Shown here piece by piece: positions 2,578 to 60,916 of a stretch of 64,000 nucleotides of DNA. The DNA comes from Lytechinus pictus. Lineage: Eukaryota. The stretch covers positions 1,612,001-1,676,000 of the forward strand of contig NC_087250.1 of assembly GCF_037042905.1 (NCBI RefSeq), written 5' to 3'. The translations under genes were made by a program, and so were the position numbers. The notes beneath the pieces were generated by a model that did not search any database, had not been told where the DNA came from, and worked only from the letters and a program-made list of their open reading frames with translations. The first letter of the stretch is position 1. Every line of letters starts with the position of its first letter.

Positions 2578-5423
2578 TTAAAGGATAAGTCCACCCCTAC
2601 AAAAAATTCATTTGAATAAAACGAGGAAAATCCAACATGCATAACACTGGAAATTTTATCAAAATCAGATAGTTTTGGTTAAATTCACAAAAATAGTAAT
2701 ATGGACAACCTGTTCAGTATTTATTTACTTTTATTTTTTTTATTAAAATATATTTATACAGGATAACAGGCTTGGTCCTGTTAACATAAAATAACAATAT
2801 ATACATAATAGATAAAAGAGTAACTTGGGTAATGTACAGTAATGAGTGAATTCAATAACATTTAAAATCAGAATTATCATTAATACAAAATTGTTTAGAG
2901 ATAAAATAGACTACCAGTCACAATTCCCAGACTCAGCACTACCTGCCTCAGCCAGAGAACAATAGAATCAGTGGACCAAATCCATTGCTCTCCGGCCGAA
3001 ACAGGCAATAGTGATTCAAAGAATGGTGACTGGTACTGTATTCATTTTTTTTAATTGACGAAATGTGAAGACTATCCTGTAGACAAAACAATAGCTGTGA
3101 AATATAAATTAAGATGTATGATATCATTGACATAGTAAATACAAAATTCCACAAGATTTATGAAGGAAATTAAGGATATAATTATCTTTGAGCATATCAT
3201 ACTAGATTTAAGTATAAGATTTTACAAAATAAATATCGCCAAGTTAAGTAATGGAAGCTTATTTACTAAGAGTACGAATTATATTACATAAAAATTATTC
3301 GTTCCAACATATTTGATATCCCAAATCATTAACACAATTCAAAACGAGAAAAATAAAGTAAAATGGAACAAAAAGCATATAATATTAATTATTGAAATAA
3401 AACTTCTTATAAATCAATTTAAATGTTTCGAAAGTTTGTGCATTTTGAATATTATTGGGTATGTCGTTCCATCGTTTGGCATCGGAAAATCTGAAAGGTG
3501 AACAGCGGGTGCAACTACGTTAAGGCTATCATTATTTCTTGTATGGTAATTATGTCGGTCACATACCATTTCAATGTCATTACAAAGTTGGGGAGGGGCT
3601 AATCCATGTATACATTTAAACATTTGTGTGGCAAGAAAGAATTCTTTTCGTTCATCCATATCAGTCCAGGTTAGGTTTTTTACAAGTGTTTTAAGAGAAA
3701 TATTTTGATCAAAGTTTCCAGTTAGAAACGTGCAGCTCTTTTTTGTAATCTATACATTTTGCTTTTGTTTTTATCAGTAGTATTTCCCCAAATAGGTAGT
3801 CCATAATCGATGCAAGGTTGTATTGTAAATTTATAAAGGGTGTTTAATAATGAAAGACTTAAAAATGTTCTTAATTTTCCAAGGGAACGGATCTTGAATC
3901 CAATGGATTTGCATAAGTTATTGACGTGAATGTCCCATTTAAGATTTTCATGTATTAAAACCCCTAAATAACGAATTGACTTAACTTGCTCAATTTCAAT
4001 CCCATCAATAAATATTTTCATTACATCATGGGAGCGTGTTTTTTAAAACATACATTTTATTTTGTCGACATTTATCTTTAAATGGTTAAGTTTATACCAG
4101 TCATTAAGAGAATCCATATTTGATTGCAATTTTGAAGTTATTGTCTCAACATCTTTACCAGTCTCAAATATAATAACATCATCAGCATGAATTGCTATAA
4201 CACCAGACTTAATTGATTGTGATATATCATTTATAAACAGCAAGAAAAGCGTGGGAGCAAGAACTCCCCCTTGATGTACCCCTACAAAAAGTTCTTTCTT
4301 GGCAGAAAGCTTTCCTTGTGAAAAAACAAACTGATTTCTATTTTTAAGGTAACATGTGAACCACTTAAGCATATTTCCTACTTTACCATATTGTTGCATC
4401 TTAAATAGTAGAATCTCATGGTCTACACAATCGAAACATTTCGATATATCTAAAAGACATGCTCCTATTTTTTCTTTTTCATTAAATGCATCAAGGAATT
4501 CATCAATGACTCTGTGGAGACACGTAGTCGTTGAGTGGTGTGGTAGGAACGCACGCTGTTCAGTATTGATGAGATTGTGTTTAAGGAGATATCGGAGCAA
4601 TTGCTCTTGAATTTCCTTTTCTATTATTTTAGAGATATGACTAAGTACAGATATTGGGCGAAAATTTGCTTCTTCATTCCTTGGGCCTTTCCCTTTATAG
4701 ATTGGAGTTGTTCTTGCCAATTTCCAATCTTCTGGTACATCACCACATTTTATACTTAGATAAAAAATTTGGGTTAAGGATTTATGAATATATGGTGCTG
4801 CTATTTGAAGTAATCTTGAATCAAATCCTAGTACATCAATATTACTTGTTTTATCTAAATGAAGTAAATGTTAAAGGATTTTCTCCTCTTTTAAATATTC
4901 TATTTCAAATTTGTAAATACAGGAGGGATTTTTCCAATTTACACATACAATTTGAGGAAAAGATTGGGATATACTTTTACCAACAGTACGTAAACAAGGG
5001 GACTGATGACATCACTCACTCAGTATTTCTTTTATATTTTATTATATGAAAACTTCTAATTTTCTCCTCATTCTCCTGTGAAACAATTCACCCTTCCTGA
5101 ATATGTGGAATTAAATTGTTTTATCTTTGTATGGTTCATATTAGGTTGGTCCCAACTGCCAAATAAGTATAAAAAAATAATATTGTATAATTCAAACAAC
5201 AAAAACAGAAGAAATAGCGAGAGAGGGACATCATCGACTCTCTCATTAATTGCATGTCACCAAGTTGTGCATTTAACTGTTTTGTGAAAAAATATTGCAA
5301 AACTTTAAAATGTCATAACTTTCTTATTTTACATCTGATTTTGATGAAACTTTCAGTGTTATTCTTGTTTGATTTTCTCTTTTGATTCAATCAATATTAC
5401 TTTGGGGTGGTCTAGACCTCTAA
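2578..5423. mobile_element. Non-autonomous DNA element (TTAA-flanked, Kolobok-like) split by a LINE insertion
   Basis: Left ttaaaggataagtccacccc (2578) is an imperfect inverted match to right ggggtggtctagacctctaa (~5404-5423); subterminal arms also inverted (gaaattttatcaaaatc / gattttgatgaaactttc). Confidence 0.55.
2720..4750 (-). mobile_element. 5'-truncated, frameshifted CR1/L2-clade LINE (reverse transcriptase relic plus 3' UTR)
   Basis: ORFs 4043-4720 (PIYKGK, NFRPISVL, LDISKCFDCVDH, GVHQGGVLAPTLFLLFIND, HADD), 3722-4021 (YLGV, WDIHV, RLQKRAAR), 3414-3659; A-rich tail on minus strand near 2720. Confidence 0.9.
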
Positions 5424-17183: not shown

Positions 17184-19001
17184 TTAGAATGTGAGCCGCT
17201 TTTCGAAGACGAGAATACTGTCTCCATCAGAAGTAATTATCTTGCCTGATGATGAGATCATTACACGAGATAAGAAAAGGTGATATCGCCTATGCACCAC
17301 AGTCCATTGATCAGTCATTCTAGTTGATAGAGGGAATGACGTCACTCTTCTCTTCTTCACTTCATTCTCAATCATCACCTGATCAATCATACATGTCTTG
17401 TACTCGTCGTCTAATGTCACAACGTACATGTCATCTGTTATAGGATCAACACTGACATTATAGATGTCATCATTGTGGGGGATTTCCCTTTGACCACCCT
17501 GTCTGTCTATGATTAGTACTCTCTTACCAAGAGGGTAAGGTTGAGCGATGATGTGACCTGATGATAGCACACCTCGCATCACTACATCCTGTTTACATGT
17601 GATGGTATTCACGATCTTACTATCAGCTGGGTTGATGACGTATATAATAGACTGACCCCTCTCAGCAGCGATGATCATCCCATCACGGTCAACAGCTACA
17701 TGCACCGATGAGGTATCGTGCGTTGTGTTTCTTTGTATTGTGACGTCATTGATGCGCATCCATTGTCTGTCATACACACTGATGCATCCAGTCAAACTGT
17801 CCCCTGTACAACCTTTATAGCGTCTACCACACACTATATTGCCACCATTCAGTAATGCACAGGAGATTACCAATGATGTATTAGTACCCGTTATCACTCT
17901 CTGGATGTGGTTAGTGTTAATATCTAACATGTATGTATGCGGGCTACCTGAGACTATGCCATTGATGATCACATTACATTCATCTATGCAACCCACAATA
18001 ATTGGGTATGTGATTTTATCTTTGACACTGATTGTATCACTAAGCATCCACTCGCCATCATACCCACCAATCCTACCATCATACTTTTCTCTCCCAACAC
18101 TCTTCACAAACCTCACACATGATATTCTATCAGTGATTTGTTTCACATCATTCTTATAAAGTGGTTTCTTTAGTTTATCACTCACTGACATGTTCACACT
18201 ATGACCATCTTTAACAATGTTTTTATCGTCTTCTAGTACTGTATCTATGGTTTGTATTGCATTCTCTATTGTTTTTGTGTCATCCTGTAATGATTTCATC
18301 AACTCTCTGATCTTCCTATCCTTCTCTTTAACAATGTTATCAATGTCTCTATGAAGACCAATCTTCTTACTGTCCATGTGTCTTTGTCTAATCTGTGCAT
18401 TTGTATGGATTAATTCAAGTTGTTTCTCCCTCTCTTCATTGTTCTTTCTAATCTTCTCATTGATCTTCATAATCTCCTCTTGAAGTACTTGATTCTGATC
18501 ATCAAATTCTTGGTTGATTTTGTCAGCCTCCATCTTCTCCTTGACTTTATCTAAATTGATCGCATCCTTGATTATGGAATTAACTTCATCTGTCAAAGCT
18601 TGTAGATGTGTGTCTGTGTCTTTCGTGCATTGGTCAATTTCACCTTCATAAAGACGACCTTCTTTTAATTTGTCCCGCCCTTTTTCTTTTATACTTGTAA
18701 GATTTGCTTGAAGGTCTCCAATTGCGACATCCATATTTTGTCGCACACATGGGTCTAAATGATCTAATGCACAAAAAGCACACAACGGTTTACCATGACT
18801 TTTACAATATAATTTTACCTTTTCATCATGTTCTTCACAATAAATATTTGGTACACCTCTTTTAACTCTTGCGACGCATCCTTCTTTTGAGGCGCAGTCA
18901 TCACAGAGTCTCTTCTTCTCCTACACGTAGTACGTCACATCTGTGATTGATTGACACTCATTTCCTTCACATTGTTGGTCTAGGGTGAAGTTAGTTGCCA
19001 T
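17184..19001 (-). pseudogene. RING-less TRIM-like gene copy 1 (B-box1, B-box2, coiled coil, NHL-like beta-propeller) with premature stop at codon 27
   Basis: accATGg at 19001 (MATNF); CEGNEC...CDDC; CEEHDEKVKLYCKSHGKPLCAFCALDH; E/K-rich coiled coil; VAVDRDGMII, VSVDPITDDMYV beta repeats; TAG at 18921-18923 where copy 3 has GAG; 606-codon frame otherwise open. Confidence 0.85.
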
Positions 19002-37528: not shown

Positions 37529-38107
37529 CTAGAATGTGAGTCGCTTTTCGAAGACAAGAATACTGTCTCCATCAAAAGCAATTATCTTGCCTGATGATGA
37601 GATCATTACACGAGATAATGAAAGGTGATATCGCCTAAGCTTTACAGTCCATTGATCAGTCAGTCTAGTTGATAGAGGGAATGACGTCACTCTTCTCTTC
37701 TTCACTTCATTCCCACTCATCACCTGATCAATCACACACGTCTTGCGCTCATCATCTGATGTCACAACGTACAGGTCGTCTGTTATAGGATCAACACAGA
37801 CATTCAAGATGACATCACTGTGGGGGATTTCCCTTTGACCACCCTGTCTGTCTATGATTAGTACTCTCTTACCAAGCGGGTAAGGTTGAGCGATGATGTG
37901 ACCTGATGATAGCACACCTCGCATCAGTACTTTCTGTTTACATTTGATGGTATTCACGATCTTACTATCAGCTGGGTTGATGACGTATATCTTAGACTGA
38001 TTCCACTCAGCAGCGATGATCATCCCATCACGGTCAACAGCTACATCCACCTTTGAGGTATCGCGCGTTGTGTTTCTTGGTATTGTGACGTCATTGATGC
38101 GCATCCA
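37529..38107 (-). pseudogene. TRIM-like gene copy 2, only the C-terminal ~192 codons of the beta-propeller remain
   Basis: WMRINDVTIPRN...VFEKRLTF open frame, closely similar to copies 1 and 3; N-terminal part not found elsewhere in window. Confidence 0.88.
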
Positions 38108-38477
38108 CTGTAAATACATAATGCATTCTAATCAATCATTCTATTCTATACAATGTTTTTGAAATATAGTCATAGATTAAAGTTTCAACATAATTCTCTA
38201 CTGCATGTCTATTACAGAGAACAAAAAGGTGACCTACTTCAGTAAAGCCATTCGAATCAATTTTTTGTTTAATGCTATATACACTCTTATTTAATTCTAA
38301 GTTTAATTCCCAAGGCAAGAATATATTCTTAGATTGCAAATAAAAAATATAAAAAATAATAGAATAAAATAAGATGAATAAAACAAATTAAAGACCCCAC
38401 AAGCTCTGTATACATAGAATTCAGTGTACACTTCTCTACTTCTCTACTCCGAGATTGAGAGGGTATTTAGAGTGGAT

Positions 38478-41400
38478 CTAACTGAACTTATTGTAATTTG
38501 AGGGGCTACTTAATATCCACTGATTTTTTACACATTGTATATTGAGTTTGAGGTCATCGTTGTAGCCCCTCAAATCTCTTGAAATGTTGTTGAGTTGGCA
38601 GTGGACCGACTCTCCCCCTTGTTCACCCATCATCCCAAGGCTTGCTCTCCAGTCTCTGAACCAGGGGATGACATGATACTGCAATAGATGCTGTTTGGGG
38701 GTCACGCTCTCTGTGGGGAAGTTCTGACGGTAGAACAACATATACTCTTTGATGTCTTTGTCTGTCAGTAAATAAACGATACAAAAAAAAAAAATAGAGA
38801 TCTATAAATGTTATTTTCTAGTAATATTTTTGCTTCTTCAGTGTCAATTGATATTTTCTTGCTCTGTCACTCTTTATTTATTTGATATGAAAATTACTTG
38901 CATTTCATTTTTTTTTTGCAGCTGACCTTTATGATCATGATCTCTTAGACTCTTACCCAGCTTGTCGATGACTGAGTCGTCCAGGAAAGTACCCGTGTTT
39001 ATACCCCGGTGGCATGCCCCGAACAGCTTTAGCAAAGTATTATACTTGCTGGCTATCTCTTCTGCCTTCTGGATGAGGTCCCGGTCGTTGGGGCAGAGTG
39101 ACTGTACCTTCTTTGATATAGCAGCAGTGATCAGATCAGTGTTCTCAGGCTGTTGGAACAAGGTACACGAGGATAGGTTCAAAGTAAAAGGATAGTGACA
39201 TTTACTATTAGAATAAAGTGGACATTAGGCAAGAAGCAAACATCTAGAATTTATATTTTCTTGTATTATTCAAAAGAAAGACAATGTGAATTACTATAAT
39301 TTGTGTAAATATAGTAGTATATTTCAGGAATGTTCTTACTTTTCATGATATACTCTACTCACCTGTAAACATTTATGTACATGGTTCCCTACAAATGAAC
39401 GACCATGGTACGCCTGTCTGCTCACTCTCAACTGCTGTAGTGCTTCTTCTAGACCAACATTAGTTGGTCCAGAGTGAACTGTCATTTCTGGTATTTTGCC
39501 TATTTCCTTCTCCTACAAATAAAAAAGAGATTTTATATGTTAAATTTTATATTAATTTTAGTTAAAGATGCATTTGGTACATCTATACATGATTTAAGAT
39601 TAAAACGTATGCAACTCGTATTTACAATACTGCCAGTGTGACATCCAAGATACTAACCAGTGTAACTTTCTCTCTCTTCTTCTCTTCAGCCATTTCCAGG
39701 ATGAGGGTGGGCGGTTCAGCTTCAGGGTAAAGAAGTCCAACCATTATGTGCTGGTCCATGAGGTCGTGGAGTTCTTCCTCAGCAAGCTTCAGTCTTGACT
39801 GGAGACTCAGCTTCTTCAGCTGCTGTTTGAAGGCCTCTTTTGCTTCCAGTTGGTCTGTAGGACTTTTTGCCAAGGACTGGCCAATCTCCAGGTCCAGAGT
39901 GTGACATGCTTGGCAGAGCGAGTTGAAGTGCTTCAAGAAGACCCCGAGGGAGATATGGAGCCCAGGAGGACAGACCTGATAAATAAGAGAAAAGGGCTTA
40001 TAATATCAGAGGTATTAATAACAATTTTCATTGTCATCATTGCAGATGAAATTAAGATTTCACTTTTGAATGTTCTGAATGTTTGTCTTCCTGAGGGGTT
40101 TAAAGTAGCTATAACCCGATAAGCATAAAGGTCTGTGGTAAGATACAGATCCGATTACACACCCACCCCACCCCTGGTGAGAGTTATATTCTGGCTACTG
40201 ATTAAGCATTTGGCTATTGAAATCATTTTTTTCTTAAATATCTTACCCTATTTATTGGAATGTCAAAGAATGGGGATCTGATGACGTTATTAGATTCCTT
40301 TGGGATGCCACAGGTTTTGAAGTGGTTCAGGGATTCCTTGAGGGTCTGCAGGCTTCGCTGACGGGGGACAGCCATTGGTGGGTCAGCCATTTCCTTCTTG
40401 GTCATCTCACAGTAGAGACAGCAATGACGGCCTGGTGAAGAAAAAAAAAATGGGGATACAAGTCAAGAGAATTTTTTTTTTTTTTTTTAATTACCTCTAT
40501 TCAATCAAAATAATATATATGTATATATAATGTTTATGAAAGTAAGGCTTACCATTGGGGCCAGTGAGTCCATACATGCGGGTCAGATATTCATAGTCGC
40601 CGAAGGCAAAGACTTTCATGGTTTTCCCTCTGTATAAAGACAAAATATGAGATAGACACAATAAAATTCACATACCAAATAACTACATTCACATTAGAAA
40701 TCTTACTCATTGAAATTTTATAGGTTCTGGTTATCTTTTTGATTTTTATGGATATTAATATTTTATTCAACAGAAGAAGAAAACACACCGCCATGACATT
40801 GACTCCAAATCAGCAATTTGGCATCTAATGGTCTCCAGAGAGACATCGAGGTTGTAAGTGGAGTCAGATCCAGGGAACAACATGATCACCCGGGTGTTGT
40901 GGAGGCTATTGGGTCGCTTCACATTGGCCAATTGCACCATTAGCTTGAAAGTTCCTCCCCCTTTGTCGCCTCCCACTTTCAACCAAATTTCTCCTTCGGG
41001 GATGTGGTCGTCATGCCAGGTGAGCTCTCCAAGTCTGTAGATATGTAGAAATAGGATATTATTGCATTATTCAAAGGGCTATTTAATTTGATTTAAATGG
41101 GTTTAATTAATAAAATTATATTACCAGAATAAAATCATAATGCTTCTGAGGATAAGGAATAGATATCAATATCAGAAACACTATGGCCCAAATTCACAAA
41201 GGAGGTTTAAAACTCTCTTGTGAATTCATCCCTATCATTTTTTTTGTAATTGGTGCATTCAGTAATCATTTTTAATGATATTTAAAATATCTTTCTTCTT
41301 TTGTTATGTTAATGATTTGCTTTAATGGTTTTGTTTACATTATCACAGGTAGAACTCACCGATCATATTCCTCTAGTAAGTCCTTGACAAGGGCACTGAG

Positions 41401-42159
41401 GCTTCTTACTGTTACTACCGGGGTCTCCTTAATTTCCATGCCAGTCTCACTTGAGCCTTGTTGGAGAGGCAACAGTTCCCCGGTAATGTTGTTTTTTACC
41501 ACATCATCTTGGAGTCTCCTCACTTCCCTCTCATTTCCTGTAGAAATTCTCCGTTCTTTTAGCCAGATGTTAAGAAATATATTTAGGTATTGTATTTTTA
41601 TTGTATTAATGACTTAATCTAGTATGAGGTGTAATTCCTGGTGGGGTGGGGGGGGGGGGGGAATACTCATCTTATAAGGTATATGGGGATATGTGCCACT
41701 CTAATGGGTCACTTTTTTAAAAGAAATCCCAAAGCATGGGGTAATGTTTTGTGCCAGAAAACCTCCAAAACATGGGTAACTTTATTGTTAAGAATGATAT
41801 TCTCGCCCGTATATATTCTCGTCGTTTGAGAATATCATTCGAGATGCAAAAGTGGTCTTTACAAAAAAATGAAATCCCTTTTAATTGGTACCCTGTAAAG
41901 GTGCTGTGGATAAGTCAAGGGAATGTGAACCACGAGATCTGGGGTTCAAATCCCACCACAGTACCAATGTCCTTTAGCAAGATATTAATCTACATTTGCC
42001 ACACTCGACCCAGGTGTTGTAAGTGGGTACCTGGTAGGATTCATTCCTTGAATGCACTGAGATCTGTATAAAGGCTCCAGGGGCTAAAGCCGGGGTAAGA
42101 ACATCCAAAGTACTTTAAAAGTCCATAGAGACGTATCATGTGATGCAAATGTTGAGCAG

Positions 42160-42213
<54 letters not shown>

Positions 42214-44247
42214 GTTATTATTATTATTATTATTGTTATTATTATTATTCCTTTCTGACTAAATGACCCATTAAATTAATAAGTATGGGTATGAACTCTT
42301 CAGCTGCAGATCCCCGTCCAAACCAAATCTGAGTACCCTATTCCGGGGTGTAATTACATGAATGTCCATAACAAAGATTGTTCAAGTCACCTCTTCAAAC
42401 GTCGTAGCTTTCTCCAACTCAAGCTGAAGAAGCTTTTCAGCTCCATAATGTCTCTTGATGGAATATGGAGGGGTTGTGGGCCCAAGATCCCTGTGATGCT
42501 TGCAGATTGGGAAACTTCATGTTGCTGTTGAGTATCGGCTGCCTCTCTCCCACCAGAAACCTCTTGCCTTACATGATGTATTATTGACGTTCTTTTACGG
42601 AGGGTGGATGATGAACAGGTTGTACTTGGTACGATGCTGCTTGGAATTTTGAAAGCTCTCATAGGCTGTAAGAATATATAGATGGCAAGTTACCGCTGAA
42701 GTTTCATTTTCAAAATAACATTATATTATTCAAGATAATGGTGTAAAATTATTAAAATCTTTTAGAATACATGTATATCTAATGAGGATTCAACATACAG
42801 GGTTGTGTATCTAGAAAATAGTTAAACTATAGCAATTAAATGATATCTATGACTTTCTAGAAATCCATGTTTTCTTTTGTTATTTTTAGTTTTGTTTGGT
42901 GGGGGGGGGGGGGGGGCAAAGTTTTGTTGTTATACTTACATGATATATGCACCATTATGATTATTTTATTTGTTTCTTATACTGTGAACTAAAATACATT
43001 AATGGCTAATTTCTTTACAGTATGAAAACTTAAATGTATGAAACTGAAATTATATATATAATATGTATATAATAAAATACATATTTACTAATATTACTTG
43101 GGTAATATATACCCAATCATTTGCCTTTATATGTGAATTCAACCTGATCAACCTTGCATAATTCAAATCTACTGGGACTATTGAAATAACTTTTTTAAAT
43201 GTTGAAACTTCTGAAATAAATTTGACTGACAATGATAAAGAGAATGATATATTTTGAGACCCTAACTTGTTCGTCTTCCACAAAATCTTCTGCAAGTTTG
43301 AAATATGTGATGATGATTGTTACTTTAAACTACCGGTAGCTAGGAGATAAGACTTTTGCATTTACCTTTCCACGACCTGCTAAACCTATGCTGGCTGACA
43401 TACCATCATGTGACTTGGCCATCTGACATTTGAGGTATTCAGAGGCTATCTGCCGGCGTTGTTGGGTGTTGAGGTCCATTTGCGTACATTTTGCGTATGT
43501 ATGGTCACAGTTTACACGAGTATGACACGAATGGCCTGATGTTTGGGTGTAGTGAAGGGATGTTTTACAATGTGAACACTGAACATGAAGATTTTGTAGT
43601 AATGTGATGATGTATGCGGCTGGTGTGTGTGTTTGAGAATAATGAAATTGAATGTTACAAAGAGGACAGCTAACAGACACTTTGACAAAGAGAGACGATA
43701 TACAGTCAAGACAAAACAGGTGGTTACAAGGTGACTCGACAGGACATGACACAACAGACCTACAAACACAACACAAAAGGAATTGTAGTGAATTATCAAT
43801 GTGAAATGTGTCTTGATTGATGTTGTATTTTTGATTGTCTGTTGTTCCTGATAGTGATAGGCCTACTCCTAATTGAGAAAAGTGAGACTGGGGTGTTGTT
43901 GTTGCAGGGGGGCGGCCACCAGCTTTTCTTTTCTTTGGTCTGCCTGGTGTTTGTGTTTCTTTAAAATGTGTACATGTATGACAGTGTGATGTTCTCCTAT
44001 GTGTGTCCCAGTTTTTTGGTGTCCAATGTAATGGTTTCTTGATTGTGAGATGGCAATAGCATGTGCTGCAAAATTTGTTTGGGTGTATATCTAAAGTGTC
44101 CTCTGAAATGTCAATATTAAATTTCTCTAGAATTATCTGATGGTAGGTTGATACACTATACGAATGCCCCTTCTTTCCCAATTCAGTTATAACCCTCCTC
44201 CCACAAAATCTACACAACAATGACAAACACTTAATATGCTGTTCCAT
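38478..44247 (-). CDS. 10-exon RAG1-like (Chapaev/N-RAG-TP-type) DDE transposase with N-terminal zinc domain and RING finger, ~938 aa
   Basis: Exons 44247-43366, 42665-42391, 41566-41360, 41034-40789, 40629-40553, 40431-40247, 39975-39658, 39512-39363, 39149-38957, 38761-38478 (2817 nt, phases all compatible, GT-AG except the exon-3 acceptor AT). Motifs: HxxxxxxxCRFCG...DxxxxHPxxFCxxC...WxxH..CxxC; RING CCVC..CNHLFCLDC..CPLC; IWLKVGGDKGGGTFK; FGDYEYL..GL.G..GRHCCLYC; PPGLHISLG; FVGNH; TPKQHLLQYHV; GEQGGESVH. Confidence 0.9.
41898..42249 (+). mobile_element. tRNA-derived SINE with long (ATT)n tail inside transposase intron 2
   Basis: ggggttcaaatccc B box, tcctttagcaagatatt core, tgggtacctggtaggattcattccttgaatgcactgag shared with SINE at 47286; (TTA)n 42161-42249. 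Confidence 0.8.
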
Positions 44248-44749
44248 GCATTTAAATGTGTGTACAGTACAGTAAGAACAAATAAAACCACCACACAAGG
44301 TCAAAATCAACAACACAAGATGAGTGCACAAAAAACTGTAGGATAGCTAGAAATGAAAGACAGTTTAAACAATACCAGTCAATTTTGATATAAAACCAAA
44401 ACAAAGGTATGAAAAATTGTAGATTGGTAATATTTTTTTTTAAAGAAACCTCATAAATACTGATAATATTGACTGTGATATCCTACGAGTATATGGGACC
44501 GACACACCCCGCTTGCCGCCGGCTAATTCAAAGTTGATTGCCGGTGTTTTGATTTCTTGTTTTGAATGTTACCATTGTTTTCTACGAATGTATGTGTATC
44601 ATATATTTGATTTTCATTACAAGATGAGGTTGGCCACCTCTCTGGGGTTTCCCCAAATGAGCTAGATGTGAGAGCAATATCGCGCAAAGCGTCAGTAGCA
44701 ACCCGGTAGCAACAAGTTCGAGTTTCGCGGGGGTATTTAAATTTTAAAG

Positions 44750-46380
44750 ATGAGTGAGCCCTCTCTCGGTCAAGACGCTATACATATGCATAGGGAGCTT
44801 GCACCTGCATTCACATACGTGCCATTTTCAGTAATTAAAAATGTAAGGTGGCTGCAACAGCCCCATCCCAAAGGAATCCCTGATTTCTTCTTCGCTCAAA
44901 GTACACATGATAAGTTTTGACATGATTTTTTTGGTATTATTCAGGTCATTGCGGATGCCAAGAGATATGAAAGTAGTCACCCAGCAGGTGTAGTATCTCG
45001 ACTAAGGCCTATTAATTCAAAGCTGCCACGATTTTTAGATGAACAACGGGAAGGTATCGGTCGAGATGACACGTCAGTATCACCAGCTAGAGGCCGTAGA
45101 GGCATTCAATCCTCTTCAAGTCAACGGAAGAATCCAAAGGAACGACAGAAGCGACATCATGAATCAACAACAAAGACTATCAGAGGACAAGGGAGACAGC
45201 GATCAAAGAGTGAAGGTGATACTGAGCTGAGGTATAAATACAGTTCATAGATTCATTTATCTTTAAGTATGAAACAAATGTTTGCGGCAGGAACGATATC
45301 CAGCATTTCATGGAAGTGAATCAGCTGTCTGATTAACATATTATTTTATCTGATATAAAGATCTGATTACCGGAGCAGTCAAGATGTATAAAGATGGACC
45401 TTCTTGTCTTTCGCCTCTTGAATTGTCAGGTTTCACACTTCATAACCTCGTTTAGTGTTGTTTCTTCTTTGCCGTTATCTCATATTCTTAATTTATTGTA
45501 ATGTATTTTTGTCCTCTCTTGCGGCATCTCCAATTGCGTATTTTGGTGGATCTACCTTTCCTTGATACATTTTTCAATGACAATAGTGCTCTTACTATTT
45601 CATTGTTATTTTTGACGAGTCGGTTAAGTCGGTTTGCATAAAGAAAATAATTCAATTACTTTCATATTATACATGCCGAGTCTGGTACTGATTTTAATGC
45701 TTCGTATTTCTTGCAGATCCTCGGAACTCACTAAGCTTCCTTCTATCAAACAAAAAAGTTCAACAAAACCCAAGACGTTCTATGAGATAGCTAAAGAGGA
45801 GCAAAATGTCAGAGAAACAGCGCCCTCTGCGTTGGATCTTATATATCGTCAGTTTGGTGCAGTCAAAAAGGTAAGATTGATAACCTCTTTCTCAAATTAG
45901 GTCGTATTTCCCCCCTCCCTCATACCAAGGTGACAACCCTGATCAACGGATAATTCATCGAAACAGATAAAAATGCTGGTTTAGAAATGTTTACGTCTTT
46001 CGACCTCGGACTGCGAGAGGTTTCTGTTTACCTATTTGAGGAAATAAAAAAAAAACAAGTAATGCGCTAGTCACACATAAAGTTTCTGAATCTACGTGAA
46101 AATAGCCGTTAACACCGTAATTGATATAAACATAAATGGAATTTTTGACAATGTTCATAAATTTGTAAAAGTATAAAATTTGAATTGTATATAGTATATT
46201 TTAATTTTCATTCTGAATAACTTAGAAAAGTTGGTGATGATTGTAATCGTAAACTTGTTTATGTTTTTTTTTTCACAGATGAAGGCCAGACGTCAGTATA
46301 GTGAAGACGATTATAAGAAACTGAAAGACATGCTTAGAGCTCAACAAAAACGATACATCAGATATAAGATAAACCTTTAA
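44750..46380 (+). CDS. Predicted 4-exon gene, ~211-aa basic Arg/Lys/Ser-rich protein of unknown function
   Basis: Exons 44750-44842, 44945-45231, 45717-45870, 46279-46380; all GT-AG, phases 0/2/0 compatible, no stops: MSEPSLGQ...VIKN/VIADAKRY...EGDTELR/SSELTKLP...FGAVKK/MKARRQYSEDDYKKLKDMLRAQQKRYIRYKINL*. Confidence 0.65.
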
Positions 46381-59109: not shown

Positions 59110-60916
59110 TTAGAATGTGAGCCGCTTTTCGAATACGAGAATACTATCTCTATCACAAGCAATTATCTTGCCTGATGATGAGATCATTACACGAGATAAT
59201 AAAAGGTGATATTGCCTAAGCTCCACAGTCCATTGATCAGTCACTCTAGTTGATAGAGGGAATGACGTCACTCTTCTCTTCTTCACTTCATTCCCACTCA
59301 TCACCTGATCAATCACACACGTCTTGCGCTCATCATCTGATGTCACAACGTAGAGGTCGTCTGTTATAGGATCAACACAGACATTCAAGATGACATCACT
59401 GTGGGGGATTTCCCTTTGACCACCCTGTCTGTCTATGATTAGTACTCTCTTACCAAGAGGGTAAGGTTGAGCGATGATGTGACCTGATGATAGCACACCT
59501 CGCATCACTACATCCTGTTTACATGTGATGGTATTCACGATCTTACTATCAGCTGGGTTGATGACGTATATCTTAGACTGACCCCACTCAGCAGCGATGA
59601 TCATCCCATCACGGTCAACAGCTACATCCACCCATGAGATATCGCTCGCTGTGTTTCTTGGTATTGTGACGTCATTGATGCGCATCCATTGTCTGTCACA
59701 CACTGATGCATCCAGTCAAACTGTCCGCTGTACAACCTTTGCACCATCTACCACATACTATCTTTTCATAATTCAGTAATGCACAGGAGATAACACATGA
59801 TGTAATCGTACCCGCTATCACTCTCTGGATGTGTTTAGTGTTCATATCTAACATGTATGTATGCAGGCCACCATTGATGATCACATTACATTCATCTATG
59901 CAACCCACAATAATTGGGGATGTGAATTTATCTATGACACTGATTGTATCACTAAGCATCCACTCCCCATCATATCTACCAATCCTACCATCATACTTCT
60001 CTCTCCCAACACCCTTCATAAACCTTACATCTGATATTCTATCAGTGATTTGTTTCACATCATTCTTATAAAGTGGTTTCTTTAGTTTATCAATCACTGA
60101 CATGTTCACACTATGACCGTCTTTAACTATGTTTTTATCGTCTCCTAGTACTGTATCTATGGTCTGTATTGCATTCTCTATTGTCTTTGTGTCATCCTGC
60201 AATGATTTCATCAACTCTCTGATCTTCCTATCCTTCTCTTTAACAATGTTATCAATGTCTCTATGAAGACCAATCTTCTTATTATCCATGTGTCCTTGTC
60301 TAATCTGTGCATTTGTATGGATTAATTCAAGTTGTTTCTCTCTCTCTTCATTGTTCTTTCGAATCTTCTCATTGATCTTCATAATCTCCTCTTGAAGTAC
60401 TTGATTCTGATCATCAAATTCTTGGTTGATTTTGTCAGCCTCCATCTTCTCCTTGACTTTATCTATATTGATCGCATCCTTGATTATGGAATTAACTTCA
60501 TCTGTCAAAGCTTGTAGATGTGTGTCTGTGTCTTTCGTGCATTGGTCAATTTCATCTTCATAAAGACGACCATCTTTCACTTTGTCCCTCGCTCTTTCTT
60601 TTAGAACTGTTAGCCTCGCCCCACTTTCTTTTATTGCATCATTAATATCTTGTTGCACACAAGGCTGTTGATGTTTGATCATAGCGCATGAATAACACAA
60701 TGGTACACCATGAGTTTTACAATATAATTTTACCTTTTCATCATGTTCTTCACAATAAATATTTGGAACGCCTCTTTTAAGTCTTGCGATGCATTCTTCT
60801 TTAGAGGCGCAGTCATCACAGAGTCTCTTCTTCTCCTCCACGTAGTACGTCACATCTGTGATTGATTGACACTCCTTTCCTTCACATTGTTGGTCTGGGG
60901 TGAAGTTAGTTGCCAT
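59110..60916 (-). pseudogene. TRIM-like gene copy 3 with a 2-bp frameshift deletion at ~59698
   Basis: ORFs 59696-60916 and 59110-59703 join into the copy-1 protein; plus-strand tgtcacacactg vs copy 1 tgtcatacacactg. Confidence 0.88.

What the first reader, a model, noticed from the sequence alone, without database searches (positions are those of the whole stretch)
38478..44247. Nearly intact 10-exon transposase with RAG1-like domain architecture (zinc domain + RING + zinc finger + DDE core)
Seen: nine scattered ORF fragments and unlisted short exons splice into one stop-free 2817-nt frame. Known: HxxxxxxxCRxCG...DxxxxHPxxxCxxC...WxxH..CxxC is the Chapa domain shared by Chapaev transposases and the RAG1 N-terminus, and RAG1 follows it with a C3HC4 RING and a zinc finger, as here. 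Core motifs line up in RAG1/Transib order: GGD (first Asp), GDYE (second Asp), CLYC, LHISLG, GNH, HxxxxH, EQGGES (Glu). Inference: the first-Asp context (KVGGDKGGGTFK, not KESCDG) puts it in the Chapaev/N-RAG-TP group, so it is relevant to how RAG1 acquired its non-core region. All predicted catalytic and zinc-binding residues are present.
Basis: partly seen in the sequence, partly recalled or inferred. Interest (0 to 1): 0.9.

Follow-up and report, generated by a model that had tools for sequence, protein, structure and literature searches.

The report
Chapaev transposon copy with RAG1-like transposase
This is a damaged copy of a young sea-urchin "Chapaev" jumping gene whose enzyme has the same domain layout and predicted fold as the immune recombinase RAG1; the family is already known, but the genome also holds intact-looking copies.

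Summary
The 10-exon, 2817-nt stop-free frame on the minus strand (44247 to 38478) is real. An 88 % identical Strongylocentrotus purpuratus RefSeq protein and nine other full-length homologues align without gaps at the junctions they cover (E1/E2 rests on the nine, since the RefSeq model starts in exon 2).

Two defects were missed:
- The intron-2 acceptor is AT in this copy (T at 41567). Three paralogous copies have AG.
- The copy (38109-44821) lacks the last 2.45 kb of the 9.1-kb element, including the 3' terminus. It is fused there to a TRIM/NHL-like host gene.

Two full-length copies elsewhere (C7, C15) are about 99 % identical to this one. They have CACGTA...TACGTG ends and 4-bp target-site duplications, one confirmed by an empty site. 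Their frames are intact and every junction is GT-AG.

The protein has a Chapa/NZD zinc domain, a RING, a zinc finger and a DUF1280 core. The predicted core of the S. purpuratus homologue superposes on mouse RAG1 459-1004 (Z 28.3, rmsd 3.5 Å, 453 residues). It also superposes on BbRAG1L and HzTransib. All DDE and CxxC/HxxxxH residues are present.

Pfam RAG1 (PF12940) finds other loci in this genome but not this family. This is therefore a Chapaev element, not RAG1L.

Verdict: a new member of a known kind, of moderate interest. No transcript evidence was obtained.

The parts
38109..44821 (-). 3'-truncated copy (6.7 kb) of a ~9.1-kb Chapaev-type DNA transposon
   Evidence: About 99 % identical over this exact span to copies on C7 and C15. 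Flanks differ beyond 44821, and the other copies continue 2.45 kb past the position of 38109.
44816..44821 (-). 5' terminus CACGTA (the 3' terminus TACGTG is absent from this copy)
   Evidence: The same terminus occurs in the C7 and C15 copies, where the reverse complement of the 3' end also starts CACGTA. The TIR is short and imperfect, about 10 of 14 bases.
43366..44247 (-). Exon 1 (aa 1-294): Chapa/NZD zinc domain (about aa 1-100, 44247-43948), RING (aa 159-198, 43773-43654) and zinc finger (aa 224-241, 43578-43525)
   Evidence: Pfam RING E 2e-4 and RAG1_imp_bd E 0.006. Best PDB sequence hits are RAG1. AF2 pLDDT 87.7; the RING plus zinc finger matches TRAF6, LNX and RAG1 1RMD.
42391..42665 (-). 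Exon 2 (aa 295-386, phase-2 end); helical region corresponding to the RAG1 NBD/DDBD start
   Evidence: Acceptor TTACAG, donor GTGACT. Homology. VIA rows with model 7-58 against RAG1 390-458.
41567..41568 (-). Defective intron-2 acceptor (AT instead of AG)
   Evidence: The window has T at 41567; copies C7, C15 and C6b have G.
41360..41566 (-). Exon 3 as required by homology (starts ...S WLKERR)
   Evidence: Gap-free alignment to P0159 and nine homologues across the junction.
40789..41034 (-). Exon 4 with the first catalytic Asp D478 (GAC 40967-40965) in KVGGDKGGG
   Evidence: Pfam DUF1280 E 2.5e-13. D is invariant in 22 homologues.
40553..40629 (-). Exon 5 with the second catalytic Asp D548 (GAC 40598-40596) in FGDYEY
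   Evidence: Invariant D. It lies 19 residues before CxxC, as D708 does before C727 in RAG1.
40247..40431 (-). Exon 6 with CLYC (C567/C570, 40420-40409)
   Evidence: Invariant cysteines. They align to RAG1 C727/C730 in the HMM alignment.
39658..39975 (-). Exon 7 with VCPPGLHISLG (H631) and a long helical insert
   Evidence: Invariant L, H, L and G.
39363..39512 (-). Exon 8 with RQAYHGRSFVGNHVH (N773, H774)
   Evidence: Invariant G, N and H.
38957..39149 (-). Exon 9 (helical)
   Evidence: Homology and GT..AG sites.
38478..38761 (-). Exon 10 with H869/H874 (38690-38673), catalytic Glu E895 (GAG 38612-38610) in GEQGGES, and stop TAG 38480-38478
   Evidence: Invariant H, H and E. They align to RAG1 H937, H942 and E962.
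38079..38109 (-). Rearrangement junction: transposon interior joined to a TRIM/NHL-like tandem-family gene copy
   Evidence: Sequence from 38108 downward matches two other copies in the window (17734-17763, 59660-59689) and about 15 on C6. There is an ACA microhomology at the joint.

Best explanation
Window 38109-44821 (minus strand) is one copy of a young, low-copy autonomous Chapaev-family cut-and-paste DNA transposon of a sea urchin.

The element:
- The full element is about 9.1 kb, with CACGTA...TACGTG ends, and makes 4-bp target-site duplications.
- It carries one 10-exon gene and no second gene.
- The 936-938-aa transposase has a two-zinc Chapa/NZD domain, a C3HC4 RING, a zinc finger, and a RAG1/Transib-type catalytic core. 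The core carries the DDE triad D478/D548/E895 and a CxxC...HxxxxH zinc site.

Inferred mechanism, by analogy with RAG1 and Transib: the core binds the CAC-terminated ends, cuts them with the DDE site and integrates with a 4-bp stagger. The N-terminal zinc and RING module would add regulation or ubiquitin-ligase activity. None of this has been tested.

This particular copy is probably inert as a mobile unit:
- It has lost its 3' 2.45 kb, including the 3' end, in a rearrangement that fused it to a TRIM/NHL-like host gene.
- Its intron-2 acceptor is AT, so correct splicing is doubtful even though the reading frame is still open.
For: Shown:
- Exon model of 2817 nt with no internal stop.
- Junctions gap-free against an 88 % identical S. 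purpuratus protein and nine other homologues.
- Four copies at 98.7-99.9 % identity to one another. Two are full-length with different flanks, TSDs AACC and GGAT, and a paralogous empty site for the C7 insertion.
- The C7 and C15 copies have stop-free 2811-nt frames with all GT..AG junctions.
- DUF1280 in the window's exon 4; DUF1280 with RAG1_imp_bd and/or RING in full-length homologues.
- Family profile against RAG1 101-421 at E 1.8e-32, with collinear weak core matches placing CxxC, HxxxxH and E on C727/C730, H937/H942 and E962.
- AF2 model of the 88 % identical homologue at pLDDT 91.3. Foldseek's top 49 hits are all RAG1, BbRAG1L or HzTransib (best E 4e-15).
- VIA-align Z 28.3, rmsd 3.5 Å, 453 residues against RAG1 459-1004. 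BbRAGL gives 25.5 and HzTransib 25.4; the next hits are P element at 14.2 and Hermes at 8.5.
- Chapaev hallmarks as published: CAC/GTG termini and a 3-4-bp TSD (PMC4079192).

Inferred: the mechanism and the inertness of this copy.
Against:
- The core structure was predicted for the S. purpuratus homologue, not for the window's own joined protein.
- No named Repbase Chapaev sequence was available for a direct comparison or tree.
- The single-base acceptor difference could be an assembly error.
- No CACTA/Mirage structure exists in the PDB, so the fold result cannot separate the 'CMC' and 'Transib superfamily' classifications.
Confidence: 0.88

Rival explanations
1. The window copy is still a working transposase gene. 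It would be spliced at or near 41566 despite the AT acceptor and able to act in trans on the full-length copies, even though it cannot move itself.
For: The frame is open over all 938 codons. It has only four substitutions and a 2-aa insertion relative to the C7 and C15 copies, and all catalytic and zinc residues are intact. The 574 bp upstream of the ATG and the 5' end are retained.
Against: AG-to-AT at an acceptor normally abolishes its use. The only in-phase AG nearby (exon start 41548) has no pyrimidine tract and deletes the conserved WLK. No RNA evidence was obtained.
Confidence: 0.15
2. It is a domesticated host gene, a RAG1-like recombinase or E3 ligase conserved among sea urchins, rather than a transposon.
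For: An 88 % identical predicted protein exists in S. purpuratus, and relatives are annotated as ordinary 'uncharacterized protein LOC...' genes in many echinoderms.
Against: There are four near-identical copies on three contigs, two of them with defined CAC...GTG ends. Two have 4-bp TSDs and one has a matching empty site. Older decayed copies with stops lie on C3.
Confidence: 0.04
3. It belongs to the RAG1L/TransibSU (ProtoRAG-type) lineage rather than to Chapaev.
For: The predicted core superposes best on RAG1 itself (Z 28.3). The N-terminus has RAG1's NZD-RING-ZnF order.
Against: PF12940 does not detect these copies, while it finds genuine RAG1-like loci elsewhere in the same genome at up to 250 bits. 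Profile-profile comparison with the genome's own RAG1L core gives E 0.011 over the C-terminal 110 columns only. Identity to RAG1 in the structural alignment is 12-14 %. The TSD is 4 bp, not 5 bp. No second (RAG2-like) gene is present in the 9.1-kb element.
Confidence: 0.02

Closest known systems
[quoted passage not shown]
   Same: CAC...GTG termini and a 4-bp TSD. N-terminal Chapa zinc domain followed by a RING. DDE core with the GGD / GDY / CxxC / HxxxxH / E pattern. Distribution in echinoderms, cnidarians, sponges, lancelets and molluscs.
   Different: Nothing tested contradicts membership. This family and species copy is not named in any paper I could search. No Repbase sequence was available for a tree.
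Chapaev3
   Same: A Chapa/NZD-like N-terminus related to the RAG1 N-terminus.
   Different: Published Chapaev3 elements make a 3-bp TWA TSD between A and T (PMC4079192). Here the TSDs are 4 bp (AACC, GGAT).
RAG1 / RAG1L (ProtoRAG, TransibSU) and Transib transposases
   Same: Predicted core fold over RAG1 459-1004. Spacing from the second Asp to CxxC is 19 residues in both. HxxxxH lies about 20 residues before the catalytic Glu. NZD-RING-ZnF order in RAG1. CAC-starting ends.
   Different: Only 12-14 % identity in the core, and not detected by Pfam RAG1. The first-Asp context is GGDKGGG, not CDG. TSD of 4 bp versus 5 bp. No RAG2-like partner gene. There is a roughly 100-residue helical insert between the LHISLG and GNH motifs.
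Pfam DUF1280 (PF06918)
   Same: The window's exon 4 and all full-length homologues match it.
   Different: Pfam gives it no function. Here it corresponds to the part of the Chapaev core that runs up to and includes the first catalytic Asp.

Membership tests
Chapaev (CMC-Chapaev) DNA transposons | Terminal inverted repeats with invariable 5'-CAC ... GTG-3' termini (PMC4079192) | tested here: met
   Full copies on C7 and C15 start CACGTATG and end ...AATTACGTG. The window copy has the 5' CACGTA only.
Chapaev (CMC-Chapaev) DNA transposons | 3-4-bp target-site duplication | tested here: met
   AACC (C7) and GGAT (C15). An empty site for the C7 insertion carries a single AACC.
Chapaev (CMC-Chapaev) DNA transposons | N-terminal Chapa zinc domain (HxxxxxxxCRxCG...HPxxxCxxC...WxxH...CxxC) | tested here: met
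   H4, C12, C15, H55-P56, C60, C63, W80, H83, C89 and C92 are present and invariant or nearly so across 55 homologues. The family profile hits the RAG1 NZD structure 21WB at E 7.5e-14. The ligand pattern fits 'type I' of bioRxiv 10.64898/2026.01.24.700457; this is inferred from the pattern only.
Chapaev (CMC-Chapaev) DNA transposons | DDE transposase clustering with named Chapaev transposases in a tree | not testable with these tools
   No Repbase or RepeatPeps sequences were available. The indirect support is that the homologue set covers the taxa from which Chapaev was described: Hydra, Branchiostoma and C. elegans DUF1280 (PMC4411706).
Chapaev3 (Aplysia Chapaev-3Aca group) | 3-bp TWA TSD inserted between A and T | tested here: not met
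   The TSDs are 4 bp, AACC and GGAT.
RAG1 / RAG1L (Pfam PF12940) | Core recognised by the RAG1 family model | tested here: not met
   No PF12940 hit at E<=1 on the window's ten exon pieces, nor at E<=0.1 on full-length homologues. The genome-wide PF12940 scan hits 17 other places and none of the four copies.
RAG1 / RAG1L (Pfam PF12940) | Adjacent RAG2-like (Kelch/PHD) gene within the element | tested here: not met
   No ORF or Pfam signal in the 2.45-kb 3' part of the full element. The 574 bp 5' of the ATG belong to the element, which ends at 44821.
Transib superfamily in the broad sense of Kapitonov & Koonin 2015 (Transib, TransibSU, Chapaev, Chapaev3) | RAG1/Transib-type core architecture: RNase H fold with interleaved CxxC / HxxxxH zinc module and C-terminal domain | tested here: met
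   Z 28.3 against RAG1, 25.5 against BbRAGL and 25.4 against HzTransib, compared with 14.2 for the next family. Zinc ligands and the DDE triad are collinear. Tested on the 88 % identical homologue P0159.
Canonical Transib | 5-bp TSD | tested here: not met
   4-bp TSDs.

The most novel reading that the evidence does not exclude
The whole RAG1 architecture may exist in a Chapaev element that looks recently active and has intact-framed full-length copies. That architecture runs from the NZD through the RING, zinc finger, NBD-like helices, DDBD and RNase H with its ZnC2/ZnH2 module to the C-terminal domain. If so, the N-terminal module and the RAG1-type core were already joined in a common ancestor of Chapaev and the Transib/RAG lineage, rather than RAG1 having picked up its N-terminus later from a Chapaev-like element. 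This sea-urchin family would then be a tractable system for testing what the NZD-RING module does in a transposase.
Probability: 0.35. Interest if true: 0.65.

Novelty: new member of a known kind. Interest (0 to 1): 0.42.

Why it matters
How RAG1 got its non-core N-terminus is still debated. One view is a later fusion with a Chapaev/N-RAG-TP element (PMC8355894). The other is an ancestral fusion followed by loss in Transib (PMC4411706). The 2026 NZD structure paper states that experimental validation of Chapa-domain function in Chapaev systems is lacking.

This sea-urchin family adds a concrete case. The element is very young and has defined ends, TSDs and an empty site. Two copies have intact frames. 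The predicted core is RAG1-like over its whole length. The same genome also carries genuine RAG1-like loci, one of them (C4) with an NZD-like match 2.3 kb upstream.

That makes side-by-side biochemical comparison possible. It does not reveal a new kind of system. The window copy itself is defective.

Tried and rejected
I first read the 0.40-0.48 word share of 16 runs guessed to be RNA as exon-only content, because exons make up 49 % of the stretch. That reading is rejected: the same runs hold 60-79 % of intron 1's words. There is no splice or expression evidence either way.

2. A second gene (RAG2-like) in the element. The 2.45 kb downstream of the transposase in the full copies has only short ORFs without Pfam matches, plus about 100-bp fragments of high-copy repeats. 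Rejected.

3. The idea that the window copy sits in its original target with an ATGG duplication. The 5' flank (...AAAATGG) and the 3' junction (GTGGATGCGC; paralogues read ATGGATGCGC) looked like one. However, intact TRIM-like copies have different sequence upstream of ATGG. The joint is a rearrangement with ACA microhomology, not a TSD.

4. Direct sequence relationship of the core to the genome's own RAG1L. hhalign gave E 0.011 and probability 4 %, too weak to use alone.

5. Fold match of the NZD part to the RAG1 NZD structure. The exon-1 model search was dominated by the RING plus zinc finger.

6. Separate trees for the N-terminus and the core. These were not built because no RAG1, Transib or Repbase Chapaev sequences were available by reference.

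7. The joined window protein could not be handed to the search or fold tools because it has no reference. The 88 % identical P0159 was used as proxy.

Full report
**What is there**

The gene lies on the minus strand. Ten exons join into 2817 nt, which is 938 codons plus TAG, with no internal stop. They are 44247-43366, 42665-42391, 41566-41360, 41034-40789, 40629-40553, 40431-40247, 39975-39658, 39512-39363, 39149-38957 and 38761-38478.

Eight introns have strong GT..AG sites. The model is supported by homology:
- tblastn with three full-length relatives found by an exhaustive profile-free search (P0016 of 951 aa, P0024 of 975 aa, P0061 of 994 aa) covers every exon in order.
- The S. purpuratus RefSeq model XP_794084.3 (P0159, 638 aa) is 88 % identical to model residues 296-938. 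Its only gap is a 5-residue indel inside exon 2, and no gap falls at a junction.
- Nine further homologues are gap-free at all nine junctions.

The host is therefore an echinoid fairly close to Strongylocentrotus. This is an inference from that identity.

First, intron 2 ends in AT. The window has T at 41567, while three paralogous copies have G, which gives the canonical AG. The only in-phase AG nearby (exon start 41548) lacks a pyrimidine tract and would delete six residues, including the conserved WLK.

Second, the copy is incomplete. Whole-genome search with exon 1 found three more copies. Alignment shows the repeat unit in the window is 44821 to 38109, at about 99 % identity to copies on C7 and C15. 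A 5'-truncated, otherwise damaged copy lies elsewhere on C6.

The C7 and C15 copies continue 2.45 kb beyond the position of 38109, giving elements of 9126 and 9169 bp. In the window, the transposon interior is joined at 38109/38108 to a copy of a TRIM/NHL-like gene. That gene is tandemly repeated about 15 times on this contig and three times in the window. The joint shows an ACA microhomology. The 3' end is nowhere else in the window.

**It is a transposon**

- The full copies begin CACGTATG... and end ...AATTACGTG. The inverted repeats are short and imperfect.
- Their flanks are unrelated, and they carry 4-bp duplications: AACC on C7 and GGAT on C15.
- The C7 insertion lies in another repeat. 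An uninterrupted paralogue of that repeat, near the second C6 copy, reads straight through with a single AACC. This is an empty site.
- The C7 and C15 copies have stop-free 2811-nt frames with all junctions GT..AG. They differ from the window protein by four or five substitutions and a 2-aa indel.
- Older decayed relatives with stops (C3) and more distant family members (C18, C19, C10) also exist.
- The 2.45-kb 3' part holds no detectable gene, so the element has one gene.

**The protein: N-terminus**

Exon 1 carries H4, C12/C15, C60/C63, H83 and C89/C92. It also carries a C3HC4 RING (C159-C197) and a further C-C-H-C finger (C224-C241). All are invariant or nearly so in 55 homologues.

- A profile of 22 full-length relatives matches mouse RAG1 101-421 at E 1.8e-32 and the isolated NZD structure 21WB at E 7.5e-14.
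- The window's own exon 1 has RAG1's RING as its best solved-structure hit (E 1.6e-07).
- Its AF2 model (pLDDT 87.7) matches RING-plus-zinc-finger modules of TRAF6, LNX and RAG1 1RMD.

**The protein: core**

The window's exon 4 matches Pfam DUF1280 at E 2.5e-13. Full-length homologues score up to 7.5e-23.

The following residues are invariant in the family alignment: D478, D548, C567/C570, H631, N773-H774, H869/H874 and E895. These numbers are window numbering, mapped from P0016 numbering.

In the HMM alignment to RAG1, the CxxC falls on C727/C730, the HxxxxH on H937/H942 and the Glu on E962. The second Asp lies 19 residues before the CxxC, as D708 does in RAG1.

AF2 of the 88 % identical homologue, built with a 41-sequence alignment, gave pLDDT 91.3:
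- Foldseek's 49 significant PDB hits are all RAG1, BbRAG1L or HzTransib (best E 4e-15).
- VIA-align gives Z 28.3 (rmsd 3.5 Å, 453 residues) against mouse RAG1 459-1004.
- BbRAGL scores 25.5 and HzTransib 25.4. The next families are P element at 14.2 and Hermes at 8.5.

**Family**

The core is not RAG1/RAG1L by sequence:
- PF12940 finds 17 other places in this genome, including 612-624-aa open frames at up to 250 bits. One of these (C4) has an NZD-like match 2.3 kb upstream. None of the hits is at the four copies.
- Profile-profile comparison with that RAG1L core gives only E 0.011.

CAC...GTG termini and a 3-4-bp TSD are the published hallmarks of Chapaev (PMC4079192). Chapa followed by a RING is described for two Chapaev subgroups (PMC4411706). 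The 4-bp non-TWA TSD argues against Chapaev3.

Relatives occur in echinoderms, Hydra, sponges, lancelets and molluscs, all annotated as 'uncharacterized'. The literature already discusses its relevance to the RAG1 N-terminus (PMC4411706, PMC8355894, bioRxiv 10.64898/2026.01.24.700457).

**What is inferred, not shown**

- The cut-and-paste mechanism, by analogy with RAG1 and Transib.
- Zinc binding.
- Any E3 activity of the RING.
- Recent mobility, inferred from about 99 % copy identity, the TSDs and one empty site.
- That the window copy is non-functional.

No transcript evidence was obtained.

**Earlier scan notes**

One note proposes a gene at 44247-46380 as a two-gene module with the transposase. 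The element ends at 44821, and the other copies share nothing beyond it, so that gene is not carried by the transposon.

Another note describes about 16 kb of foreign sequence replacing part of a TRIM-like copy. This agrees with the junction found here, but only 6.7 kb of that sequence is this element.

Noticed in passing
window 37529-38119 (minus) and 17734-17763, 59660-59689: A TRIM/NHL-propeller-like gene family is tandemly repeated on this contig, with about 15 copies at 92-96 % identity between C6:1.24 and 1.82 Mb. The copy next to the transposon keeps only its 3' part. Its listed ORF borrows its ATG from the last 11 bases of the transposon fragment.
   Followed up: partly
window 38079-38108 compared with L015 about 4597-4666 (3' end of the full element): The host sequence right at the junction shares a 12-mer (AATGGATGCGCA) and a 9-mer (ATGACGTCA) with the 3' subterminal 70 bp of the full element. 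My rough estimate puts the joint chance probability near 1e-7. However, the break in the transposon lies 2.4 kb away from that region, and no longer homology exists. Unexplained.
   Followed up: partly
L005, L006, L008 (G000:C17:10.327-10.337 Mb): Three tandem intronless ORFs (open frames of 362, 613 and 576 aa) carry a clear Chapa/NZD domain (hhalign probability 98.6 %, E 5.5e-16; Pfam RAG1_imp_bd). No RING, DUF1280 or Chapaev core was detectable. They may be a Chapa-domain protein family without a transposase.
   Followed up: partly
L010 and L020 (G000:C4:15.672-15.677 Mb); L018, L019: Genuine RAG1-like loci in the same genome. A 624-aa open frame matches Pfam RAG1 (227 bits) with an NZD-like match 2.3 kb upstream (35 % identity to the window's residues 1-76). 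Two identical 612-aa open frames lie on small contigs C182 and C233.
   Followed up: no
G000:C6:26781013-26798532 (L014, L017): The fourth copy is 5'-truncated. It has an 8-bp insertion in exon 1 and a 15-bp deletion that removes KVGGD (the first catalytic Asp). It is interrupted by about 9.1 kb before its last 438 bp.
   Followed up: partly
The transposon's 5' end is at 44821 and the paralogous copies have unrelated sequence beyond it, so that gene is not part of the element.
   Followed up: partly
P0009 (1239 aa, from the representative search): A predicted protein elsewhere in the databases combines five CXXC zinc fingers with repeated Chapa-like plus RING units. It is either an odd fusion or a mis-assembled gene model.
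   Followed up: no
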